From the sequence record NC_070998.1: 64,000 nt of DNA. The stretch is one strand, 5' to 3'. Below the pieces are notes generated by a model. That model worked only from the letters and a program-made list of their open reading frames with translations, had not been told where the DNA came from and searched no databases. Below, piece by piece: positions 20,826 through 30,670 of the stretch. Position 1 is the first letter of the stretch. Every line of letters begins with the position of its first letter. A program made the position numbers and the translations under genes.

Positions 20826-21824
20826 ATGTCTATTAAAACATTAACTGAAATACTTGGACTTTCTCTTGAATTGAAAGATTATGAAGATCGTGTACAAAAA
20901 AGATATGACTATATTCAGGAACAACTAGAGAAAGATCCTGAGTTCGTAGCGTATGACTATCTGGAATACTGGCATGGTCGCGCAGATATCCACTATCTGT
21001 TTAAAGAAATTATTATTAGTTCCAAAGGAGATTATTATCAGGAGAAGAACGGTGTATGGGCGGAAGCTGAACGGTTTAAAACTAAAGCATATCTAGAAAA
21101 GGGGTTCAGGTTAGAAGATCACGGTCCAAAAACATTCCAGACACACAGAGCCGTTGGATCAGTTTTTATTCCTAAGTACGAACACCTTAAAGACGTACCT
21201 TATTGGAAACTTGAGGTAAACCATAAAGATGGTGATAAACACAATCCAGATTTCTCTAACCTAGAATGGATGACTAAATCTGAAAACACTCAACACGCTC
21301 TTGAAAATGGACTCCAGACATCTGGGTTAAATGATCCCAATACTATTCCTTATCTAGCTACAGTCGTTATGGAAGGAAAATATAAAGGACAACAGTTCGT
21401 ACTTGCAGGAACCGCTGCATTTGAAAAGGAGGGGATCTCTAGAAGTTCTGTTAGAGATCAATCAGAGGGTAAATTCCGCGCTATTGCTGGATGTACTTGG
21501 AAGGTTATCACTAAAGAGGAAGCCAAAGATTATCCGCAAGGAACCCCAGAGGGATTTATGACTTTCCTTAAATCCAATAGTACTTTATCAGATCCTAAGG
21601 TTAAACCAGTGTTAGGAGTGGTACAAAATGGAGCTTTTAAAGGACATCATTTTTGTTTATTTGGCGGGAAACACATAGTGGAAAACGGATTTGGTCAAGC
21701 TTATGTGTCCGGATATGCCAAACACAATAAAGTTTATAAAGGAGTATTATGGAAATATATAACTCAGGAAGAAGCTGCTAACTACCCAAGAGGTCTTGAT
21801 AGGGAAATCTTTGCAACTTTGTAA
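20826..21824 (+). CDS. Free-standing HNH homing endonuclease with tandem C-terminal repeats
   Basis: FQTHRAVGSVF...EVNHKDGDKHNPDFSNLEWMTKSENTQH; N-terminus homologous to HNH 10540; two WK.IT.EEA..YP.G repeats. Confidence 0.92.
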   Translation: MSIKTLTEILGLSLELKDYEDRVQKRYDYIQEQLEKDPEFVAYDYLEYWHGRADIHYLFKEIIISSKGDYYQEKNGVWAEAERFKTKAYLEKGFRLEDHGPKTFQTHRAVGSVFIPKYEHLKDVPYWKLEVNHKDGDKHNPDFSNLEWMTKSENTQHALENGLQTSGLNDPNTIPYLATVVMEGKYKGQQFVLAGTAAFEKEGISRSSVRDQSEGKFRAIAGCTWKVITKEEAKDYPQGTPEGFMTFLKSNSTLSDPKVKPVLGVVQNGAFKGHHFCLFGGKHIVENGFGQAYVSGYAKHNKVYKGVLWKYITQEEAANYPRGLDREIFATL

Positions 21825-21866: not shown

Positions 21867-23597
21867 TTATGCTACTTCTTTTTGTTGTTCGATAAAAGGT
21901 TTAACGGTATTAGTATAGAAAGTAGAAATATCAGAAATAGTTGGCATCCCGTAAATCACGTTACACAACTCTACAGCGTTCGCCTGGGGACTAGACGCGT
22001 AGTTGATCCCAACTTTACGATATTCCATTCTATCCAACCCTTCTATCTGACAAACCTCCAATCTAGTTGTTTTGTTAGAAACATTTAGAGCTACTGTTGA
22101 GTTCGGATATGCAGCGGCAACATCTATGTCATCTACCGAATGGCGACCCTTACTCTTCCATGACGGTAATCCAGCATAGATTGTTTTGCCATTCTCTTCG
22201 TTAAGCTCTGCGTGAAGTAGAGCGATCCAATCTCGAAGATCAGGTTTAATAGATTTGAACTCATCTTCTTTCTGACGACCTACTGTACCCCATACATAAC
22301 CGTTTTCCAACGCTATGAACGAAAGCTTATCAGAAATCATACTTGGCTGAGATTGATACGACTTCAACTCTGAAGATGTCACCAAAGATGGCAAAGACAG
22401 AGAGTAATCATTAGTTACCCTATTAATGTCTTCAATAACCCAGTTATCTCGAATGTTGTACATCGCATACAAATAAGGCTCGTTCTTGAGCATATATTTG
22501 TGCCACTCAGCAGAACCAGCTTGTAAATGCCCACCAATATCCGTATAGAGTTTACCTTCCACTTTTTCATGCTCAGCGGTAGCTTGCAGAGAGTAAGACT
22601 CACGTTTACCTTGAGGCGCTCGTTTAATAGCGTAGAACGACATTCCGTCAAACCACTGCCATTTAGCTGGAGCTTGAACTACTGGGAACTTCTCATGGTT
22701 ATCAAGGGGAGTTTTAGATCCATCTACTTTGGTTTTAAACTGCCTTCCTGGGAAGAAAAAGTAGTCTTGATAAACACCCGGAACTGAAGGATCAGAGTAA
22801 ACTTCTTTTAAGTTAAAGTTCTCATTAAGCAGTGCATTCTGGTTGGCTTCCATATCAAAGCCAGCGTTCCAGGATACAATGAAGTCCGGTCCTTGGTTGT
22901 GCCAGAACTGGATATTGTTATACACTACTTTACCTGGGGTATCTTCTAGTACATAATGGATTTTAACATCATGTTTTTCGATATATTCCTTTAGGTATTT
23001 CTCTTCATATTCCTTAAGGGTTTTAAGGATGTGTTCATCAGAGTGTCCATGGAATATAGAACGGAGTCCAGACCAATAAACAACTTTTTCAAAAGTAGTG
23101 GAAGCCATACAAACTGGGCCAGTAGTGTTATCTGGCATGATGAATGTTTCTACGTCATAGGCAGCTACTGAATAAGCTTCTTGGGGTTGGTGATCAGGGA
23201 ACTTATCGTAATACTTCTGCTTATAGACTACTGGGACAGTTTCTTGACATCCGAACACGAAAGGGTTTGATTTTAGATCATAGAGTTGAGCGGAACGATC
23301 CGGTCGTCCAAATAGTACTTTAGAGATATTAGTAGCGAGCCTAGCTTCATTAGAAGAGTACTTATCACATTTAGAAAGTTCAATATAATCTTTTTTATCT
23401 TTGAAATTACGGTGTTTAGGTTTTACAATATAGAAATCACGTTTGTAGTTTTCTATTTTAGCTAATCTACTTTTACGAGTTCCGTCGGCATAGATATCAG
23501 TAATTTTGGCTGTGAGAAGGTCGGAGTTAGAATCGTATTGATTAAAAGAAAGAAAGGCGTGTTTGCAAACACGAGCAACAATTTTGTTCTCTTCCAT
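21867..23597 (-). CDS. Split family-B DNA polymerase, N-terminal exonuclease/palm part (phiKZ gp82-like)
   Basis: ExoI YDVET, ExoII SWNAGFDM, ExoIII YNIRD, PolB motif A-like DIDVAAAYPN; motifs B and C absent. Confidence 0.85.
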   Translation of the reverse strand: MEENKIVARVCKHAFLSFNQYDSNSDLLTAKITDIYADGTRKSRLAKIENYKRDFYIVKPKHRNFKDKKDYIELSKCDKYSSNEARLATNISKVLFGRPDRSAQLYDLKSNPFVFGCQETVPVVYKQKYYDKFPDHQPQEAYSVAAYDVETFIMPDNTTGPVCMASTTFEKVVYWSGLRSIFHGHSDEHILKTLKEYEEKYLKEYIEKHDVKIHYVLEDTPGKVVYNNIQFWHNQGPDFIVSWNAGFDMEANQNALLNENFNLKEVYSDPSVPGVYQDYFFFPGRQFKTKVDGSKTPLDNHEKFPVVQAPAKWQWFDGMSFYAIKRAPQGKRESYSLQATAEHEKVEGKLYTDIGGHLQAGSAEWHKYMLKNEPYLYAMYNIRDNWVIEDINRVTNDYSLSLPSLVTSSELKSYQSQPSMISDKLSFIALENGYVWGTVGRQKEDEFKSIKPDLRDWIALLHAELNEENGKTIYAGLPSWKSKGRHSVDDIDVAAAYPNSTVALNVSNKTTRLEVCQIEGLDRMEYRKVGINYASSPQANAVELCNVIYGMPTISDISTFYTNTVKPFIEQQKEVA

Positions 23598-23620: not shown

Positions 23621-23684
23621 ACGTCAAATTAGGGTTCTCTAAAATATAGAACCTGTGCTAATTAATTATTCCCTGGGAGTATGT

Positions 23685-25034
23685 ATGCTAGGTATCGAAT
23701 TTATCAGAAAGGAGCATGACTTCGGTTACTCCTTAGCTGGTATGGAATTTATGGATTTCCAGAAACAGGATCGCTACCTGAAGCTGGTTGAATTTTTTAA
23801 GCCATTGATTAAAAACATGGGCGGCGTAGTCTCTATTGACTGGATCAAGAGTGAACAAGATGATCTAGTAAAATTGATTATGGAAATCTCAGGTATCAAA
23901 GTAAAGGTTGTAGAATACCACGGTTTGGATGGTAACTTAGGTATTGATGCTGGATACCTTTCTCCTAATGCAGTGTTGAACAACAAAGGTATCGATGACT
24001 TTGTAGATGCTAAACACACCAAGGTTTCTCAAGCATTCAAAAGTTTGAATGCGGATGTACTTAAAGGTTGGGTAGATCAAAAGACTGGTATGATTGGTGG
24101 GGACTTTAGTAAGATCGAGTTTGATCTTTACATCCAGACTTATATTAACATGTTCCTAAACACGGATAAACTAAAGAAACTGGGCGTTCCGCCAGAGAAC
24201 GTCTTGGCTGCATTTATTACACATGAACTTGGTCACGTCTGGACTGCTTTCTATACAGTATGGCGAAACGTTTCTGATATGATGATGCAGAACAACGCTA
24301 TTCGTATGTTGAACAGTACCGAAAGTCAGAGAGAACAAATTGAGATTTATAAAGAAACTCTCAAAGTTCTAGAAGCCGATGCTAAAGTAGATGATAAAGT
24401 CATTTCAGCACTAGATACAGACGAAGCTAGAAAAGCCTTCTTTGATAAAGCCATCTCAAATCGTGATTTACGTCGTACACTGTCTGTAGGTACAGCGGAT
24501 CGTGCTAGTGAAGTAATGGCAGATATGTATGCTATTAAAATGGGATGTCCTAAAGACCTGGTAACTGGTTTGGTTTCACTCTATGGATCTGAGGGCGCCG
24601 GAGTAGGTAGTCTTGTGTTCAGTGTCTTTATGTTATCAGTATCTTTGCTTGTCACATATCCCTTAGGAATTGGATTATGGGGGTTGATAACAACACTTAA
24701 CTTCCACGCCAGCTTAGCTAGTAGACTTGCACCAGATTACCTTTACGATAGTAATTATCGACGTATCAAAACCATTTTGCGTGAATGTGTTACTGAGTTC
24801 TCCCAGAACAAGAAAATGAAGCCTGCTGATAAACAGCAGTTCTTAGCTAAGTGTAAAGAGATTGAAAAGTTAGTAGAAGAGAACAAACCTATTCTTGAAG
24901 GAACTGCTTTCCAACGATACATTGGATGGGTCTGTTCTGGTACTGATTTCAAAGCTCAAGAGTTTGAACATTACACAGCTGAACTGGTTTCCCATAATCT
25001 CGCCCTTTATACCGACTACTTTAAAGAGAGTTAA
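23685..25034 (+). CDS. Virion protein with zincin HExxH motif and hydrophobic helices (M48-like architecture)
   Basis: GGGAG SD before ATG 23685; FITHELGHVW; EVMADMYA; hydrophobic VGSLVFSVFMLSVSLLVTYPLGIGLWGLI; AGME near the N-terminus. Confidence 0.75.
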   Translation: MLGIEFIRKEHDFGYSLAGMEFMDFQKQDRYLKLVEFFKPLIKNMGGVVSIDWIKSEQDDLVKLIMEISGIKVKVVEYHGLDGNLGIDAGYLSPNAVLNNKGIDDFVDAKHTKVSQAFKSLNADVLKGWVDQKTGMIGGDFSKIEFDLYIQTYINMFLNTDKLKKLGVPPENVLAAFITHELGHVWTAFYTVWRNVSDMMMQNNAIRMLNSTESQREQIEIYKETLKVLEADAKVDDKVISALDTDEARKAFFDKAISNRDLRRTLSVGTADRASEVMADMYAIKMGCPKDLVTGLVSLYGSEGAGVGSLVFSVFMLSVSLLVTYPLGIGLWGLITTLNFHASLASRLAPDYLYDSNYRRIKTILRECVTEFSQNKKMKPADKQQFLAKCKEIEKLVEENKPILEGTAFQRYIGWVCSGTDFKAQEFEHYTAELVSHNLALYTDYFKES

Positions 25035-25036
25035 TT

Positions 25037-25465
25037 ATGTCACATCTTGCTCACATCGTTACCTTTAAGAAAACCCTAATTGCTGATGGGATTACTGATC
25101 CGAAGCTTCAGATTGATCTTACTCGTTCTGCTTATGTTCGGGCTCTGATTAGTTTTAAACATCAATCAGCTATTGACGGTAAAGATTTTAAACCGTTCTG
25201 TAATCACGTTCTCTCTTACTGGAATGAAACTTCTCCTGTAGCGGGCTCTTTGGTAGTATCAGAAGTTATTCACTTCTTTGCTGTACTTGATAAAGCATTG
25301 AGTAACGTTGGAGAAATGGAAGTTATCCAAGTTCCAGTTACAACTGCTCCTGAGCTGCCAGAAGGTAAGAAACTTACTGAGATGGCTTCTTATACTGATC
25401 TGGTAAACGCTCTGCTGGTTGAAGCTACCGGAAAGTATAAAACCTGGGTTGAAGAGTTCTGCTAA
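25037..25465 (+). CDS. Hypothetical virion-operon protein, 142 aa
   Basis: AGAGAG upstream; packed in the operon. Confidence 0.8.
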   Translation: MSHLAHIVTFKKTLIADGITDPKLQIDLTRSAYVRALISFKHQSAIDGKDFKPFCNHVLSYWNETSPVAGSLVVSEVIHFFAVLDKALSNVGEMEVIQVPVTTAPELPEGKKLTEMASYTDLVNALLVEATGKYKTWVEEFC

Positions 25466-25475
25466 GGAGAAAGTA

Positions 25476-27011
25476 ATGGAAGATGAAATTGAATTGGGAT
25501 CTGTTATCCAACTTTCTCCCCACGCACAAACTGTTCAATTAACCTCTGGTAAAGTCAGCACGGACGACGAACCACTGATTTCTTTAGATGATGTATATGA
25601 AGTCACCGGCCAAGAATCAATCAACATTATCGTCAAAAGTGCTCAAGAGTATTTTAAACATAATCGTCTTCATCGCGATTCCTTGACTTGCTTGAAAATC
25701 TCCGGTATGGAAGGTCTCCTTCCTATTTACGACCGGATGAATGCTCGTAAAGGTGGTGAATCTTTTATTGAAGGTTTCAAGAAAGGTTTCATGGCGATTA
25801 TGAAAGCCATTGCTGACTTTATTAAGCAAGTAGTTAATTGGTGTGTGGTTAAAGTAAAAACCATGTTTGGTTTTGCCAAGACAGAAAAAGAAACAGCAGC
25901 AGCGGTACAGAACTTTGAAAAGGATGTCAAACCACGTCTTCAGAATCTTATCAAAGATACCTTTGGTAATGGAGCTGGGATTGGTACCATCTCTTTTGAC
26001 GAATTCGTTAAGTCACTTCCAGAAGGTGTTACTGGCAAAGAAGCTATGTTGATTATTAAACAACGTGGTGAGAAGGCTGAAGACGCCATTGCACGAATGA
26101 CCAGAGCGGTTGATGAAGTTCCCAGAGCCATTGAAGAAATCAATAAGTCAATGCAAAAATCTCGGGTTGTTAAAAATCGTTATCAGCAACTCATTCGCGA
26201 TCTTAAACAAAAAGCAAAAGCGAACAACATTACCGAAGGTGATATTGTAAACTTTGTAGCCGGTTTGAACCACGAAGTAACTGATACACTAAACCCTGAA
26301 CGTTGTATCAATATTGCTCAAACTCTGGCTGAGAAAGTGTTTGGTGTTCAGATTGAAGGGTTTGGTTTGGAAGGCGGGTTTAAACAAGCTCAAGATCAGC
26401 TTAAGAATGCATTGGAACGTACCAAGACTAATGTTAATGTAGAAACACTTAACGTTTATCAAAAGCTTGCTGATAACTATGTACCATTGATGGCGGAAGC
26501 GGATAATATCGCTCTTGATCCAAATTCTTTAGATTCGTTTAAAGTTATTCTGGATAACGACAGTAACTATATAGTAAACAAGATAGCAACCGATTATCCT
26601 CAATACTTCTCCATCCTTAGCGATTATGCACAGTTTGGCCAACGAGTTTCCAAGTACAATGAAGCCCTTTCTCTGTGCGTAACAGTTGTTAACGATTGTA
26701 AAGCAGTTGGACAAAGTGTCGTTAAATGGCTGACTGCCATGAAGACGATCGCGGCTGCCTATGTTACCCAGGATATTGAGAAGATTGTCAAAGCTCATGA
26801 AACATTCACCCCAGGTAACGAAGACAAGTATGTCGCCGACAAGGGCGCTTATTTCCTAGCTGATGATCTGAAGATCCTTAACTCTATTTTCCCTGGTCGT
26901 AACTGGGTTGAGGAAGGTCTTACTTACACACGTGCTATTTCTCAAATGCCAGATGTGAAAAAGCGTATCAATAATCTACTGGGTCAACTTTCTGTTCCCT
27001 TGAAGGTGTAA
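25476..27011 (+). CDS. Internal head protein (start ATG 25476)
   Basis: AAGGAG SD; GQES, GMEG, GGES motifs then an amphipathic helix. Confidence 0.75.
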   Translation: MEDEIELGSVIQLSPHAQTVQLTSGKVSTDDEPLISLDDVYEVTGQESINIIVKSAQEYFKHNRLHRDSLTCLKISGMEGLLPIYDRMNARKGGESFIEGFKKGFMAIMKAIADFIKQVVNWCVVKVKTMFGFAKTEKETAAAVQNFEKDVKPRLQNLIKDTFGNGAGIGTISFDEFVKSLPEGVTGKEAMLIIKQRGEKAEDAIARMTRAVDEVPRAIEEINKSMQKSRVVKNRYQQLIRDLKQKAKANNITEGDIVNFVAGLNHEVTDTLNPERCINIAQTLAEKVFGVQIEGFGLEGGFKQAQDQLKNALERTKTNVNVETLNVYQKLADNYVPLMAEADNIALDPNSLDSFKVILDNDSNYIVNKIATDYPQYFSILSDYAQFGQRVSKYNEALSLCVTVVNDCKAVGQSVVKWLTAMKTIAAAYVTQDIEKIVKAHETFTPGNEDKYVADKGAYFLADDLKILNSIFPGRNWVEEGLTYTRAISQMPDVKKRINNLLGQLSVPLKV

Positions 27012-27012
27012 C

Positions 27013-27696
27013 ATGGTTAAAGAAGAAGTTGTAAAGGTGATTAATGAACTGCGTATTCTCACAGCTAACTATAAGAAGTTTCGTGAGTACGTGGAGACAT
27101 TCACTTGTGAACCTCGTTGTAAAAAGGGTGTATTGGAGTTTGTTGATTCCTTGTTCTCTTACAATGATGGTGCTGGACGGGAATACCCAGCGGTGTACGG
27201 TAAGGTTCGTAAAGAACTGGGACTGAAACTTACTGTTGGTAAAAGTGATCGAAACGTTCAGTTGTTTAAAGATGCGCTACGTGATCTTTATCTCGATGCT
27301 TCTGCTGTCAACAAGCTAGTCGATACTCGCATTGAGCTAGTTACCAAGGTATGTGAATACGTAAAACATATTCAGTCAGAATTGGATAAATCAGAACTTA
27401 CTGATGCTCGTGAACGACAAGTTTATCTACGTCGCGCTCTGGCTAGACTGAAAGCTGCATTCAGTACTTATCTTGTCTCGCCTATTACTAAAGATAATTG
27501 GACCGAAGTAAGACCTTACGAATATATTCCATATCTTACAGACTCCCTGGACGAAATTATTAACAAGTATTTTACTTATGATAGTAAAGTAACACCTTGG
27601 ACTGTTGATTGGGATCATAATGAGTTAAACAATGATTTCACTGTTGATAGCATTGAGACTTTCTTAGATTACCTCGATACCTTTATTAAGTATTAA
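27013..27696 (+). CDS. Hypothetical virion-operon protein, 227 aa
   Basis: GAAGGTG SD; 1 nt after the previous stop. Confidence 0.8.
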   Translation: MVKEEVVKVINELRILTANYKKFREYVETFTCEPRCKKGVLEFVDSLFSYNDGAGREYPAVYGKVRKELGLKLTVGKSDRNVQLFKDALRDLYLDASAVNKLVDTRIELVTKVCEYVKHIQSELDKSELTDARERQVYLRRALARLKAAFSTYLVSPITKDNWTEVRPYEYIPYLTDSLDEIINKYFTYDSKVTPWTVDWDHNELNNDFTVDSIETFLDYLDTFIKY

Positions 27697-27704
27697 ATAA
27701 CATA

Positions 27705-27738
27705 AACTCTCTACTCCCTTAATTGGGAGTAGAGAGTT
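27705..27738. terminator. Bidirectional terminator
   Basis: AACTCTCTACTCCC-TTAATT-GGGAGTAGAGAGTT. Confidence 0.85.
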
Positions 27739-27748
27739 ACTTTTATGT

Positions 27749-30670
27749 TTAGTTATTTAAATGTCGTTTGAACACAATCTCAATATCTTCACGAATAGTC
27801 AGAAGTCTATCAGAAGTTTGATCAAGTGCTTTACGAATACTAAATCCATTGGTGTCGTCAACGTTGCTGATTACGTCCACAAAGTCATTCCCTGCCATCG
27901 CCACCACTTTCACGTCTATGATATCAGGAGTGCGTAGAGCAGTGATTAAGGAGCTTAGGGAGAACGTTTGTTTACGTACTTCGTCATTTGCTACTTTATG
28001 TGTATTGGTAATCAATACATTCTGAAGGTCATTATCAGTAATCCCTTCATCGGTAAGGTAGTACGTGACACTAAGTTTAATATCAGAACGAATAGTTTTC
28101 TCAATCCCTTCGTTAATAACGATCTGGGTGAATCCCATGGTGCTACGGGGTTTAAACAAGATACGTGTTTCATCGATAGCTTGTTTATTGAATTCAACCA
28201 ATTGATCGTTTACTTCGTTAGCAAAGAAATCTTCTACTAAACCGACATAAGTACCGTCGTAATCATCTTGACTGAGTAAGTAGTTAAAGTCAAACCCAAT
28301 GAAATCCCAATGATATTTAATCAGTCTAGGATGAAGCATGACGGGTTTCCCATTTTCATCGTAAACCGTTTGATCCTTGAGGTACTTCCAGATAGGCTTA
28401 GGAGGTGTCTCATTAGTCATTCTAGGTTCACCTTTACGGTGTTCCAGAACTGCTTTACCATCCACAATAACTAACTTACCATTCTCTTTCTTGTAAACGT
28501 CTTCAGGATAAACATCAGGTACGTTCTCAGTGTATTTAGCGTATTGAGCAGACCCTACTACCGGTCTAATACGAGTATAAAGAGAACGAAGATTCTTACC
28601 AAAAGAGATCTTATATTCAGTTTCAATGATCGCCACGTTTAGACTAGTAAACAAAGACTGATCGATTTTAAAATCTGCCGTAGACTTAAGCACTTGACCT
28701 TCACCAGAATAAGTGAAGATGAAGTTAACAGTTTCATCTAAGTTTACCCTGATTTCATCTTGGGGTTTACCGAATTGTTTAAACCCTTTTAGATCAATGA
28801 GGTTATTGTCGTCAATATCAAAATTAGAACCTAAGTCAAAACTAAAGATACGTTCTTTATCTTCAGTCCTGCCTAGTAATGTTCCTTTCATTGTAGCGGA
28901 AACATTAGAACCGGCTGTTTTGAACATCAATTGAATGTTCACTGCGTCATCAGATAGTTCCTTATAAGCATCACTTGATTTGGTTTTGATATTTACGGTG
29001 TAACCAGTTTTACTAGAAAGAATATTAATGCTACCGATCCCAACTTGAATACCTAGATTAGCATTCTCATATCTAAATGTCTGGTATTTGATCTCAGGTT
29101 TAGCAACACGATAACAACGCACGGCAGCACGATCGTTCATGGTATCAATGACGTACATGAAAGGTGTGTATACCATTGATCTTGTTGCCATTGTATCGAT
29201 CTTAGTTTGGTTATTACTATTAACAAGACTTTCTACCTCGTTAACAGGGAGTAATCTATTAGTCTGATTGGTGATATCAAACACTGAACCACGGATAACA
29301 GTTACACGTCTTCCATTATCAATTGCGTTACCGGAAGCGATCAACTCTTCTAGTGAAGTAAGCACAGTTCCAGTATGAGTCCCAATTGAGCTATTAAACC
29401 GCACCATTGATTCGTCATCAAAGAGTTTGTTCTCCTGAATAGGAAGATCCTTGGTAGTGCGATATAGTCGACCGGACACTGTATCGATAGACTTAATACT
29501 ATCATACCCAAGGCGTTCCAAGGTTTGGGTAAAATCAGAGTTACTAATAGGAACTTGACGACGACGATGACCGTAGATGACCATGTTTTTCAATTCGCTA
29601 AAAGTAGTACCATTCAAACCACCGCTGATTGGAGTAATGGTGTCTACAGTCACTTCATTAATATCGCGAAGCGGTAAAGAGTACTTGCTCAATTTACCTT
29701 GCTTGTTCCGATAATCAAAATACCCTACTGTATGTTCCTGACTCTTCAGTGTGCTTAGATCCTGACTGTATTCACCCTTAGTAGTGTAGATAAGAAGTGT
29801 AATACGACCCAAAGCGGTTTCATTCTGCAAATATACGGAAGGAATGGAAGCTTCGAAACTACTTTCATCAATTAAATCAATTGTCAAAGTAGGCTGATTA
29901 GGATCAAAGTTATCGTTATTGAAAACCACTGACATTTCATAACGATTATCGGAGCCATCGGGGGTAATAAAAGCCCTTACCGCGAACAGTTTATCTTTAA
30001 ACTCAATAGTATTACGATAACCAGTGGTAACGTTAACAGGATCTGGACCACGTTCAGTAATCTCTAACTGTCTCATTGGTAAATGAACAGAGAGATATTT
30101 ACGATTATCAATATTGAGGATTTCGCGATCAGGTGAGTTCCCCACTAGCGGTTTAAGGGGGGAGGTATATGAGCTGTCATAAACAACCTGATAACCACCA
30201 TGATCCATTACTCGTATCTCAACCGGATTCTCCAGTAGAAATGGAATACCTGCTACTGTGAACTGGGTATCTGGAGGAAGAACTACCTTCTTATAAGTGT
30301 TAACTTGTGTCCCATCTGTATCGCTATATTCCAAAGCAATAGAGTTGATAACTTCTTCCGAAACGATCCATCTCCACGTGAGGTTGGAGGGTTCACTAAA
30401 GACACCGTACCAGTCTTCATCACACATCACTTTAGAAAGGTCAGAAAGATTACGCGCGTGAACAGGATACTTCCTAGCTGTATTATCTCCCAGCCTTGAT
30501 ATGAACCCATAGTTAGTACCTACAATCAAGTCTACTGCATAGCTAAAAGGGTGGCCTTTGCTATTGAGTGTTCCTGAACCAGCATTAAACGTAGCTTCTA
30601 TTTCTTTGAATACGGTACCGATAATTCTACTTGGGTTATTAGCGTACTGTTCTAGTGTATTGAAGTCCAT
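27749..30670 (-). CDS. Baseplate wedge-like structural protein, 973 aa (phiKZ gp87-like)
   Basis: Beta-rich; ISGGLNGTTFSELKN...NSDFTQ resembles the baseplate-J/gp6 GG...T.xD region; synteny. Confidence 0.6.
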   Translation of the reverse strand: MDFNTLEQYANNPSRIIGTVFKEIEATFNAGSGTLNSKGHPFSYAVDLIVGTNYGFISRLGDNTARKYPVHARNLSDLSKVMCDEDWYGVFSEPSNLTWRWIVSEEVINSIALEYSDTDGTQVNTYKKVVLPPDTQFTVAGIPFLLENPVEIRVMDHGGYQVVYDSSYTSPLKPLVGNSPDREILNIDNRKYLSVHLPMRQLEITERGPDPVNVTTGYRNTIEFKDKLFAVRAFITPDGSDNRYEMSVVFNNDNFDPNQPTLTIDLIDESSFEASIPSVYLQNETALGRITLLIYTTKGEYSQDLSTLKSQEHTVGYFDYRNKQGKLSKYSLPLRDINEVTVDTITPISGGLNGTTFSELKNMVIYGHRRRQVPISNSDFTQTLERLGYDSIKSIDTVSGRLYRTTKDLPIQENKLFDDESMVRFNSSIGTHTGTVLTSLEELIASGNAIDNGRRVTVIRGSVFDITNQTNRLLPVNEVESLVNSNNQTKIDTMATRSMVYTPFMYVIDTMNDRAAVRCYRVAKPEIKYQTFRYENANLGIQVGIGSINILSSKTGYTVNIKTKSSDAYKELSDDAVNIQLMFKTAGSNVSATMKGTLLGRTEDKERIFSFDLGSNFDIDDNNLIDLKGFKQFGKPQDEIRVNLDETVNFIFTYSGEGQVLKSTADFKIDQSLFTSLNVAIIETEYKISFGKNLRSLYTRIRPVVGSAQYAKYTENVPDVYPEDVYKKENGKLVIVDGKAVLEHRKGEPRMTNETPPKPIWKYLKDQTVYDENGKPVMLHPRLIKYHWDFIGFDFNYLLSQDDYDGTYVGLVEDFFANEVNDQLVEFNKQAIDETRILFKPRSTMGFTQIVINEGIEKTIRSDIKLSVTYYLTDEGITDNDLQNVLITNTHKVANDEVRKQTFSLSSLITALRTPDIIDVKVVAMAGNDFVDVISNVDDTNGFSIRKALDQTSDRLLTIREDIEIVFKRHLNN

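What the first reader, a model, noticed from the sequence alone, without database searches (positions are those of the whole stretch)
23685..25034. Virion-operon protein with a zinc-metalloprotease signature and membrane helices
Seen: FITHELGHVW (HExxH at 24222-24236), a distal EVMADMYA (Glu at 24510), a ~35-aa hydrophobic stretch and an N-terminal AGME maturation motif; it heads a late operon of head proteins. Established: HExxH plus a downstream ExxAD with TM helices is the M48/HtpX-type zincin architecture, whereas the known phiKZ head protease is a serine protease. Inference: a second, packaged and possibly ejected membrane metalloprotease that could process ejection proteins, help form the entry channel or early vesicle, or cut host membrane defence proteins.
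Basis: partly seen in the sequence, partly recalled or inferred. Interest (0 to 1): 0.72.

Follow-up and report, generated by a model that had tools for sequence, protein, structure and literature searches.

The report
Packaged zinc protease of jumbo phage
This gene of Aeromonas jumbo phage PS1 is the counterpart of a conserved phage-head protein (phiKZ gp84, SPN3US gp45, Goslar gp67) that looks like a divergent M48-type zinc protease with a greasy helical hairpin; the family was already flagged as an uncharacterised metallopeptidase, and its job is still unknown.

Summary
ORF 23685-25034 (+), which is PS1 gp171 (449 aa), carries HELGH (24222-24236), EVMAD (Glu at 24510), a hydrophobic segment at about residues 303-348, and an N-terminal AGME.

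None of these is chance. HExGH, E276, D280 and R360 are invariant in 123 diverse relatives, and [G/S/A]-x-E21 is kept in about 90%.

The gene is the orthologue of phiKZ gp84, SPN3US gp45 and Goslar gp67. These are mass-spectrometry-proven head proteins. gp45 is cut by the serine prohead protease at the aligned Glu (ASE-20).

Sequence profiles link the family to peptidase M48:
- Pfam M48 hits in 42 of 104 members.
- Ste24/ZMPSTE24 as top PDB hits.
- hhalign 82-93% against E. coli M48 enzymes.

Three tests argue against a clean M48 assignment. The target itself gets no Pfam hit. Foldseek finds no solved M48 structure. The membrane topology differs from HtpX, because the hairpin is an insertion after the Glu helix.

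Iyer et al. 2021 already described this family as a conserved, uncharacterised zincin-like metallopeptidase. The PS1 gene is therefore a new member of a known kind.

"Packaged second protease" is supported by homology. "Ejected membrane protease" remains plausible but untested. Rival roles are inside the capsid, next to the vertex complex encoded by the next genes, or in membrane-bound prohead assembly.

The parts
23675..23679 (+). Ribosome-binding site GGGAG, 5 nt upstream of the ATG
   Evidence: Sequence read directly
23685..25034 (+). CDS PS1 gp171 (449 aa): orthologue of phiKZ gp84 / SPN3US gp45 / Goslar gp67 / EL gp52; phrog_2767
   Evidence: (phrog_2767, E 1e-74)
23685..23747 (+). Predicted 21-residue N-terminal propeptide ending in A-G-M-E (23736-23747). 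Predicted cut after E21 by the phiKZ gp175-type prohead protease
   Evidence: In 123 relatives, position 19 is G/S/A in 111 and position 21 is E in 121. The aligned Glu in SPN3US gp45 is E20, the MS-mapped 'ASE-20' site. PS1 encodes the protease. The cut in PS1 itself is inferred
23766..23918 (+). N-terminal alpha/beta subdomain (residues 28-78) of unknown role
   Evidence: AlphaFold model, pLDDT about 85-93 in this stretch
24066..24137 (+). Three short beta-strands (residues 128-151) preceding the active-site helix. Contains invariant G139 and near-invariant G128 and D131. Candidate substrate-binding edge strand of a zincin
   Evidence: The role is inferred from general zincin architecture
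24222..24236 (+). HELGH = HExxH zinc-binding/catalytic motif (H180, E181, H184), near the start of a long helix (170-211)
   Evidence: Invariant in 123/123. Aligns with the HExxH of Ste24/ZMPSTE24 and E. coli M48 enzymes
24510..24524 (+). EVMAD = ExxAD motif on helix 274-285. E276 is the predicted third zinc ligand
   Evidence: E276 and D280 are invariant and A279 is A/S only. ExxAD is invariant in the four E. coli M48 enzymes. Aligns with the Ste24p/ZMPSTE24 Glu-helix motif
24591..24728 (+). Hydrophobic helical hairpin (residues about 303-348, turn at T-Y-P), inserted between the Glu helix and the C-terminal motif
   Evidence: Hydropathy. AlphaFold helices 304-322 and 326-348. KD19 above 1.6 in 119/123 relatives. 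Central Pro/Gly in 114/123. Sequence not conserved. Membrane insertion is inferred
24744..24764 (+). Y354-D355-x-x-x-x-R360: family motif YDxPxxR. Candidate counterpart of the M48 C-terminal [S/T]HPxxxxR motif
   Evidence: R360 invariant, Y354 in 117/123, D355 in 110/123. Aligns with BepA H246...R252 once the hairpin is removed. M48 invariants H246, P247, R252
25037..25465 (+). Downstream gene gp170 (142 aa), virion structural protein. Positional counterpart of phiKZ gp85 / Goslar gp66 (vertex binding complex)
   Evidence: phrog_14520. Synteny. VBC role of gp85 from PMC11297242 and the Goslar preprint. No significant pairwise similarity to phiKZ gp85
25476..27011 (+). Downstream gene gp169 (annotated start 25476; longest ORF from TTG at 25419), virion structural protein. 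Positional counterpart of phiKZ gp86 / SPN3US gp47 / EL gp54 / Goslar gp65
   Evidence: phrog_14541. Annotation. Synteny argument in PMC5694885. VBC role
27013..27696 (+). Fourth gene of the unit (227 aa, no family hit)
27705..27738 (.). Bidirectional intrinsic-terminator-like hairpin (14-bp stem) closing the + strand unit and the convergent 973-aa gene

Best explanation
PS1 gp171 is the PS1 copy of a conserved head protein of phiKZ-like (nucleus-forming) jumbo phages: phiKZ gp84, SPN3US gp45, Goslar gp67, EL gp52.

Inferred from orthologues: it is made as a precursor. Its first 21 residues are removed after A-G-M-E by the phage's serine prohead protease during head maturation. The mature ~48-kDa protein stays inside the capsid at a few dozen copies.

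Shown by sequence: it is a very divergent relative of M48 gluzincins. It has HExxH on one helix, the third zinc ligand Glu in an ExxAD motif on a second helix, and a C-terminal YDxPxxR that matches M48's HPxxxxR. A strongly hydrophobic Pro/Gly-kinked helical hairpin is inserted between the last two motifs. Every catalytic residue is invariant across the family, so it is most likely an active zinc endopeptidase.

Inferred mechanism: the capsid holds no membrane. The hairpin most plausibly works after the protein leaves the head with the DNA, by anchoring the protease in the host inner membrane or in the early-infection vesicle membrane. There it would cut phage ejection proteins or host membrane proteins in the first minutes of infection.

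My confidence is about 0.9 for the identity, packaging and zincin layer, and about 0.35-0.4 for the ejected membrane-protease layer.
For: Identity:
- phrog_2767, E 1e-74.
- Full-length tblastn hits in 175 jumbo-phage records.
- Bridge to phiKZ gp84, SPN3US, Goslar and 201phi2-1 through Moabite gp103.
- Conserved synteny: DNA-polymerase piece (-) | this gene | small virion protein | gp86-like.

Packaging in orthologues:
- SPN3US gp45: 'Head. Processed at ASE-20', 50.3 to 48.2 kDa. It is a gp245 substrate.
- Goslar gp67: 19 peptides, 47% coverage, about 48 copies (32-76) per virion, including a peptide that spans HEIGH.
- phiKZ gp84 is annotated 'structural head protein'.

Cleavage site: [GSA]-x-E is conserved, and PS1 has the S80-type protease (E 2e-30).

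Zincin/M48 link:
- Invariant HExGH, E276, D280, R360 in 123/123.
- Pfam Peptidase_M48 hit in 42/104 members, best 2e-5, with no other family hit by more than 3 members.
- Ste24p/ZMPSTE24 are the top PDB hits with both motifs aligned.
- hhalign against BepA/HtpX/LoiP/YcaL gives 82%, and 93% with E 3e-7 when the hairpin is removed.
- The Moabite depositor's note reports HHpred 98% to HtpX 3CQB.

Importance: phiKZ orf84 has 0 transposon insertions in 1,242 bp against a genome average of 1 per 42 bp. The downstream orf85-86 tolerate deletion, so polarity does not explain the result.

Membrane role:
- The hairpin's hydrophobicity is conserved but its sequence is not.
- The protein is not resolved in the phiKZ or Goslar capsid shells, which fits an internal, mobile protein.
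- The EPI-vesicle work states that its membrane machinery is unidentified.
Against: - The target itself has no Pfam hit even at E up to 10 and no PDB hit by phmmer.
- Foldseek against PDB finds no M48 or any zincin. This holds for the full model and for the high-confidence core model, pLDDT 91.5.
- The hhalign signal is dominated by the HExxH helix. The Glu helix did not align in register with the thin four-sequence M48 profile.
- I found no experiment showing that gp84, gp45 or gp67 is ejected, membrane-bound or proteolytically active.
- The uncharged run is only 25-35 residues in many relatives, which is short for two full transmembrane spans.
- Flank charges give no topology signal.
- Copy number and operon partners fit a capsid-attached role equally well.
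Confidence: 0.45

Rival explanations
1. Capsid-resident protease. The zincin stays inside the head, loosely attached near the five-fold vertex binding complex (VBC) encoded by the next two genes. It acts there, for example by trimming or clearing propeptide fragments or inner-body proteins after the serine protease has activated it, or by releasing capsid-wedged proteins at ejection.
For: - It is the first gene of a unit whose next genes correspond in position to phiKZ gp85/gp86 and Goslar gp66/gp65, which are structurally resolved VBC components.
- Goslar gp67 is estimated at about 48 copies (32-76). In the same table, proteins modelled at 55 copies (gp65, gp42) give estimates of 76-79, and the 12-copy portal gives 16.
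- In SPN3US the abundance index of gp45 (2.99) is close to that of gp47 (2.17).
- Unassigned helical density surrounds the Goslar VBC.
- Iyer et al. 2021 proposed extra maturation cleavages for this zincin.
Against: - All cleavage sites listed for SPN3US head proteins fit the A-x-E motif of the serine protease.
- Proheads of the gp245-null mutant show no evidence of proteolysis. This does not exclude a zincin that needs gp245 to activate it.
- A strongly hydrophobic hairpin has no obvious use in a membrane-free capsid.
- Label-free copy estimates are noisy: a 55-copy protein was estimated at 16 and another at 194.
- PS1 gp170 shows no significant pairwise similarity to phiKZ gp85.
Confidence: 0.25
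2. Assembly anchor. The hairpin inserts in the host inner membrane of the producing cell, with the HtpX-like catalytic domain on the cytoplasmic side. It helps nucleate or tether the prohead, which assembles on the inner membrane, and the protease activity or the gp245 cut contributes to release.
For: [quoted passage not shown] The anchor is unknown.
- gp45 is a gp245 substrate and is the head protein that carries this hydrophobic segment.
- M48 enzymes such as HtpX are membrane-anchored with a cytoplasmic active site (established knowledge, not tested here).
Against: - The mapped cut removes only about 20 N-terminal residues, far from the hairpin (residues 303-348). It cannot detach the protein from a membrane.
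- The mature protein, whose reported processed mass (48.2 kDa) still includes the hairpin, stays in virions at tens of copies.
- Only one face of a prohead can touch the membrane.
Confidence: 0.12
3. Degenerate, non-catalytic structural protein that merely keeps a zincin-like scaffold.
For: - No Pfam hit for the target.
- No structural match to any solved protease.
- No activity has ever been reported.
Against: H180, E181, H184, E276 and D280 are invariant in 123 representatives whose overall identity to the query is only 15-45%. This is the pattern of a working active site, not a relic.
Confidence: 0.04

Closest known systems
phiKZ gp84 / SPN3US gp45 / Goslar gp67 / EL gp52 family (phrog_2767; the 'conserved uncharacterized zincin-like metallopeptidase' of group-1 jumbo phages, Iyer et al. 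2021, example AMR59696.1)
   Same: - Full-length homology.
- Same length (about 415-460 aa).
- Same gene neighbourhood.
- Same invariant HExGH, E..AD and R360.
- Same N-terminal [GSA]-x-E site, which is experimentally cut in gp45.
- Same hydrophobic segment.
   Different: Nothing essential. PS1 gp171 is 17-20% identical to phiKZ gp84 and SPN3US gp45, and 29-44% identical to the OBP, EL and Aeromonas D6-type proteins. Virion presence and cleavage have not been measured for PS1 itself.
Peptidase family M48 (Pfam PF01435): HtpX, Ste24/ZMPSTE24, BepA, LoiP, YcaL, Oma1
   Same: - HExxH helix.
- Third-ligand Glu in an ExxAD motif on a later helix.
- A C-terminal Pro...Arg motif.
- Association with membranes.
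- Weak but consistent profile matches.
   Different: - The target is below Pfam detection.
- There is no Foldseek match to solved M48 structures.
- The motif-3 His is replaced by Tyr.
- The HExxH-to-Glu spacing is 92 residues, against 61 in E. coli BepA (H140 to E201).
- A single hydrophobic hairpin lies after the Glu helix, instead of HtpX's four or Ste24's seven TM helices.
- It has an extra N-terminal alpha/beta subdomain and a roughly 100-residue helical C-terminal part.
- It is packaged in a virus capsid and trimmed by a viral serine protease.
phiKZ gp175 / SPN3US gp245 / T4 gp21 prohead serine proteases (MEROPS S80/S77)
   Same: Phage-encoded protease present in heads.
   Different: Unrelated fold and chemistry (serine rather than zinc). 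The serine protease is the enzyme that processes this protein, not its relative. PS1 has its own copy elsewhere in the genome.
Head-packaged ejection proteins with hydrophobic segments (SPN3US gp47; by general knowledge P22 gp7/gp20/gp16 and T7 gp14-16)
   Same: Internal head proteins that carry an N-terminal propeptide and a hydrophobic segment proposed to engage the host membrane after ejection (gp47).
   Different: None of those is a predicted protease. Ejection of the gp84/gp45 family has not been shown.
'Zincin protease' of Bacillus phage AR9 and metagenomic Myoviridae 'peptidase/BepA-like' proteins (BFVD models)
   Same: Weak structural matches to the full-length model (E 2.6e-5 to 9e-3, TM 0.34-0.48). 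This suggests the family reaches beyond the phiKZ-like phages. From my own knowledge, not checked here, AR9 also packages a virion RNA polymerase.
   Different: Low TM-scores. The names are depositor or automatic annotations. I did not follow this up.

Membership tests
phiKZ gp84 / SPN3US gp45 head-protein family (phrog_2767) | Full-length sequence homology | tested here: met
   phrog_2767 at E 1.1e-74 over residues 18-447. tblastn hits over 95-100% of the length to OBP, EL and RisingSun. Alignment with phiKZ gp84 and SPN3US gp45 shares 13 invariant columns.
phiKZ gp84 / SPN3US gp45 head-protein family (phrog_2767) | Conserved gene neighbourhood (divergent from a DNA-polymerase piece; followed by gp85-like and gp86-like head genes; then a convergent ~970-aa gp87-like gene) | tested here: met
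   Seen in PS1, Moabite, SEGD1/SPN3US, HPP-Temi, EL, phiKZ, PCH45, Goslar and a metagenomic contig.
phiKZ gp84 / SPN3US gp45 head-protein family (phrog_2767) | N-terminal propeptide ending in the prohead-protease motif [S/A/G]-x-E | tested here: met
   A-G-M-E21 in PS1. In 123 relatives, position 19 is G/S/A in 111 and position 21 is E in 121. It aligns with E20 of SPN3US gp45, which is the MS-mapped ASE-20 site.
phiKZ gp84 / SPN3US gp45 head-protein family (phrog_2767) | Physical presence in the virion head | not testable with these tools
   Shown for orthologues only. No PS1 virion proteome was found.
Peptidase M48 (PF01435) | HExxH zinc-binding/catalytic motif on a helix | tested here: met
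   HELGH at 180-184 in helix 170-211. Invariant in 123/123.
Peptidase M48 (PF01435) | Third zinc ligand Glu in an ExxAD motif downstream of HExxH | tested here: met
   E276-V-M-A-D280, with E and D invariant and A/S at 279. ExxAD is invariant in BepA, HtpX, LoiP and YcaL. The motif aligns with the Ste24p and ZMPSTE24 Glu helix.
Peptidase M48 (PF01435) | C-terminal [S/T]-H-P-x-x-x-x-R motif | tested here: inconclusive
   The family has Y354-D-x-P-x-x-R360. R360 aligns with the invariant BepA R252, and Y354 aligns with H246, once the hairpin is deleted. The His itself is not conserved.
Peptidase M48 (PF01435) | Score above Pfam's gathering threshold | tested here: not met
   The target has no hit even at E up to 10. 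Among relatives, 42/104 hit at E up to 0.1, best 2e-5. Moabite gp103 scores 20.4 bits against a cut-off of 20.3, and SPN3US-type gp45 scores 17.7 bits.
Peptidase M48 (PF01435) | Profile-profile similarity to bona fide M48 enzymes | tested here: met
   hhalign of the family profile against four E. coli M48 enzymes gives 82% with E 1e-5, 90% for the core only, and 93% with E 2.7e-7 with the hairpin removed. The template profile is thin and the signal centres on the HExxH helix.
Peptidase M48 (PF01435) | Fold similarity to solved M48 structures | tested here: not met
Peptidase M48 (PF01435) | Zinc binding and peptidase activity | not testable with these tools
There are no biochemical data.
HtpX-type membrane topology (subfamily M48B) | Two N-terminal TM helices plus two TM helices between HExxH and the Glu ligand | tested here: not met
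   The only hydrophobic segment is at about 303-348, after the Glu helix. The region between the motifs is amphipathic helices.

The most novel reading that the evidence does not exclude
The gp84/gp45/gp171 zincin is the conserved, essential, virion-delivered membrane protease of nucleus-forming phages. After ejection its hairpin inserts into the inner membrane or the early-infection (EPI) vesicle membrane. Its proteolysis is then needed to build, open or dissolve that compartment. Examples would be processing co-ejected proteins into a channel, or releasing the genome toward the nascent phage nucleus. This would give the first named enzyme of the EPI-vesicle stage.
Probability: 0.15. Interest if true: 0.85.

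Novelty: new member of a known kind. Interest (0 to 1): 0.45.

Why it matters
Nucleus-forming jumbo phages inject their DNA into a lipid vesicle, and the protein machinery of that vesicle is unknown. This family is one of very few conserved head-packaged proteins with both a recognisable enzymatic active site and a membrane-type segment. In phiKZ it takes no transposon insertions at all. That makes it a concrete, testable candidate for an early-infection function. A single Glu-to-Ala change in a genetically tractable relative would show whether catalysis is needed. For the PS1 genome, the practical gain is a better annotation: [quoted passage not shown] instead of "hypothetical protein".

Tried and rejected
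- Pfam scan of the target alone: no hit.
- phmmer of the target and of phiKZ gp84 against PDB: no hit.
- Foldseek against PDB with the full-length model and with a high-confidence core model: only unrelated helical proteins at E above 0.4.
- I first took SPN3US gp47 to be the orthologue. Coordinates showed that gp47 is the gene two positions downstream and that gp45 is the orthologue.
- hhalign in global mode, and with the hairpin retained, did not bring the Glu helices into register.
- Long fusion proteins P0192 (1,452 aa) and P0189 (781 aa): their extra parts hit nothing in Pfam or PHROGs.
- Flank-charge analysis for membrane topology: uninformative.
- The sigma-70 promoter scan is not meaningful for a phage that uses its own RNA polymerases.
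- Literature searches for gp84, PHIKZ084, metalloprotease or zincin in jumbo phages found no functional study.
- The Thomas 2012 phiKZ head-proteolysis paper is not held in the library.
- PS1 gp170 against phiKZ gp85: no significant pairwise similarity. The vertex-complex identity of the PS1 neighbours therefore rests on position and PHROG family only.
Full report
**What is there**

The window is part of Aeromonas phage PS1, a 237-kb jumbo phage (genus Ferozepurvirus). Window coordinates equal record coordinates minus 62000.

The finding's ORF, 23685-25034 (+), exists. It is annotated PQC64_gp171, "hypothetical protein", 449 aa. A GGGAG ribosome-binding site lies 5 nt before the ATG at 23685. 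The N-terminus MLGIEF is conserved in relatives, so that start is right, not the upstream in-frame GTG.

- HELGH, residues 180-184, nt 24222-24236.
- EVMAD, with Glu at nt 24510.
- A hydrophobic stretch at about residues 303-348.
- AGME, residues 18-21.

HExxH occurs only once in the 25,611 residues of long open stretches of the whole window, and 0.009 occurrences are expected from this protein's composition.

**Which protein it is**

PHROGs places it in phrog_2767 (unknown function, E 1e-74). tblastn finds it in 175 phage records, all large phiKZ-like phages including OBP, EL, RisingSun, SPN3US-like phages, PCH45 and RP12. A second search from the Moabite homologue reaches phiKZ gp84, 201phi2-1, PhiPA3-type phages, Goslar, RAY and RSL2.

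An exhaustive profile search finds 1,770 representatives at 50% clustering, 1,263 of them at E of 1e-10 or better. Nearly all of the 150 best that were listed are 415-480 aa.

Synteny is constant: a DNA-polymerase piece on the opposite strand, then this gene, then a ~145-aa virion protein, then a gp86-like head protein, and further on a convergent ~970-aa gp87-like gene.

One correction to an early lead. The SPN3US orthologue is gp45, not gp47. gp47 is the gene two positions downstream.

**What is known about the orthologues**

- SPN3US gp45 is a mass-spectrometry-proven head protein of mid-to-low abundance, "Processed at ASE-20" by the prohead protease gp245.
- Goslar gp67 was detected in purified virions with 19 peptides, one of which spans its HEIGH motif. 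It is estimated at about 48 copies (32-76).
- phiKZ gp84 is annotated "structural head protein".
- In the phiKZ Tn-seq, orf84 has no insertion in 1,242 bp, against a genome average of one per 42 bp. The downstream orf85-86 could be deleted, so polarity does not explain the gap.
- Neither the phiKZ capsid structure (8Y6V) nor the Goslar structure models this protein, although both model its neighbours gp85 and gp86.

I found no paper that tests its function. Iyer et al. [quoted passage not shown] That accession is SEGD1_047, the orthologue. Several GenBank depositors call homologues "peptidase", "M48 family" or "BepA".

**Conservation**

I aligned 123 representatives that are only 15-45% identical to the query. 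The invariant columns are G139, H180, E181, G183, H184, E276, D280 and R360. Columns conserved at 90% or more are E21, Q26, G128, R285, G287 and Y354; D355 is conserved in 110 of 123 (89%). That is the signature of a working active site.

The N-terminal site is also family-wide. Position 19 is G, S or A in 111 of 123, and position 21 is Glu in 121 of 123. The aligned Glu of SPN3US gp45 is E20, the mapped cleavage site.

PS1 encodes the required phiKZ gp175-type protease outside the window (PQC64_gp027, E 2e-30). A cut after AGME in PS1 is therefore a well-founded inference, not a measurement.

**Is it an M48 protease?**

Evidence for:
- Peptidase_M48 is hit by 42 of 104 family members scanned one by one (best 2e-5), and no other Pfam family is hit by more than three.
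- Moabite gp103 just passes Pfam's threshold, at 20.4 against 20.3 bits.
- Family profiles searched against PDB sequences put Ste24p and ZMPSTE24 on top (E about 0.004). Both the HExxH and the "R..E..AD..A..lG" Glu-helix motif align.
- ExxAD and a C-terminal HP....R are invariant in the four E. coli M48 enzymes.
- hhalign of the family against those four gives 82% and 90% for the core only.
- With the hydrophobic hairpin removed it gives 93% (E 3e-7). The family's invariant R360 and Y354 then align with BepA R252 and H246.

Evidence against:
- The target alone has no Pfam or PDB sequence hit.
- Foldseek finds no solved protease with either the full model (pTM 0.72) or a core model of pLDDT 91.5.
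- The hhalign signal is mostly the HExxH helix.
- The membrane topology is not HtpX-like.

My reading is that this is a very divergent offshoot of the M48-type gluzincins. It is supported at motif and profile level but not confirmed at fold level.

**The hydrophobic segment**

The segment lies between the Glu helix and the YDxPxxR motif. AlphaFold predicts it as a helix-turn-helix (304-322 and 326-348). It is strongly hydrophobic in 119 of 123 relatives, has a central Pro or Gly in 114 of 123, and is not conserved in sequence. That pattern suits a lipid-facing hairpin.

In many relatives the uncharged run is only 25-35 residues. It could therefore be a re-entrant hairpin rather than one that fully spans the membrane.

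**How it most likely works**

Shown or strongly inferred: it is a precursor trimmed by the serine head protease. It is packaged inside the head at tens of copies. It has an intact zinc-protease active site.

Inferred: because a capsid has no membrane, the hairpin most plausibly acts after the protein leaves the head with the DNA. It would place the protease in the inner membrane or the early-infection vesicle membrane, where it would cut co-ejected phage proteins or host membrane proteins. I give this about 0.35-0.4.

Rival 1 (about 0.25) is a role inside the capsid near the vertex binding complex. The next two genes correspond to VBC proteins gp85 and gp86. The Goslar copy estimate of about 48 is in the range seen for proteins modelled at 55 copies.

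Rival 2 (about 0.12) is a membrane tether for prohead assembly. [quoted passage not shown] However, the mapped cut is far from the hairpin.

A purely structural, inactive protein is unlikely given the invariant catalytic residues.

All cleavage sites listed for SPN3US fit the serine-protease motif, and protease-null proheads show no proteolysis. This argues against a large independent maturation role. It does not exclude a zincin that needs the serine protease to activate it.

**Verdict**

The "HtpX-type architecture" is only loosely right.

The family and its zincin nature are already in the literature, so the PS1 gene is a new member of a known kind.

This analysis adds four points:
- The prohead-protease site is conserved across the family.
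- The hydrophobic hairpin reads as an insertion between M48 motifs 2 and 3.
- There is a candidate third motif, YDxPxxR.
- The protein ties to the vertex-complex operon and to its copy number.

Noticed in passing
window 20826-21824 (+) and 21867-23597 (-): An HNH homing-endonuclease gene sits next to a DNA-polymerase piece (phrog_3011). In HPP-Temi two 'DNA polymerase' CDSs flank an HNH gene, and Goslar has a NUMOD1/HNH gene beside its polymerase piece. The polymerase gene of these phages seems to be split or invaded by homing endonucleases at this spot.
   Followed up: no
window 27705-27738: A perfect 14-bp-stem hairpin with T-runs on both strands lies between the convergent 227-aa gene and the 973-aa gene. 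It is a likely bidirectional terminator.
   Followed up: partly
window 25419-25476: The start of the gp86-position gene is ambiguous. The longest ORF starts at TTG 25419 and overlaps the end of the upstream gene by 47 nt. The record annotates ATG 25476.
   Followed up: no
window 27749-30670 (-): The 973-aa protein (phrog_3248, E 7e-292) occupies the position of phiKZ gp87. The Moabite depositor annotates the counterpart as a T4 gp7-like baseplate wedge protein, and the phiKZ Tn-seq paper calls gp87 a putative baseplate wedge protein. A tail gene is thus embedded among head genes.
   Followed up: no
L017:2564-6922 (metagenomic contig, protein P0192): This is a 1,452-aa version of the zincin. 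The phrog_2767 part is at residues 1038-1450, preceded by a 1,037-residue N-terminal extension that matches nothing in Pfam or PHROGs. It lies in the usual neighbourhood.
   Followed up: partly
BFVD hits to the full-length model: Weak structural matches to 'Zincin protease [Bacillus phage AR9]' and two metagenomic Myoviridae peptidases (E 2.6e-5 to 9e-3) hint that the family extends beyond the phiKZ-like phages. From my own knowledge, not checked here, AR9 is a jumbo phage that also packages a virion RNA polymerase.
   Followed up: no
window 25037-25465 vs L006:5879-6325: PS1 gp170 and phiKZ gp85 share position and size but have no significant pairwise similarity. The small vertex-complex protein evolves much faster than the adjacent zincin.
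   Followed up: partly
window residues 22-26 of the target (nt 23748-23762): The five residues after the predicted cut are unusually conserved ([A/S/F]-[I/M]-D-[F/Y]-Q, with Q26 in 116/123). This is more than the protease motif needs, so the new N-terminus may have a role of its own in the mature protein.
   Followed up: no
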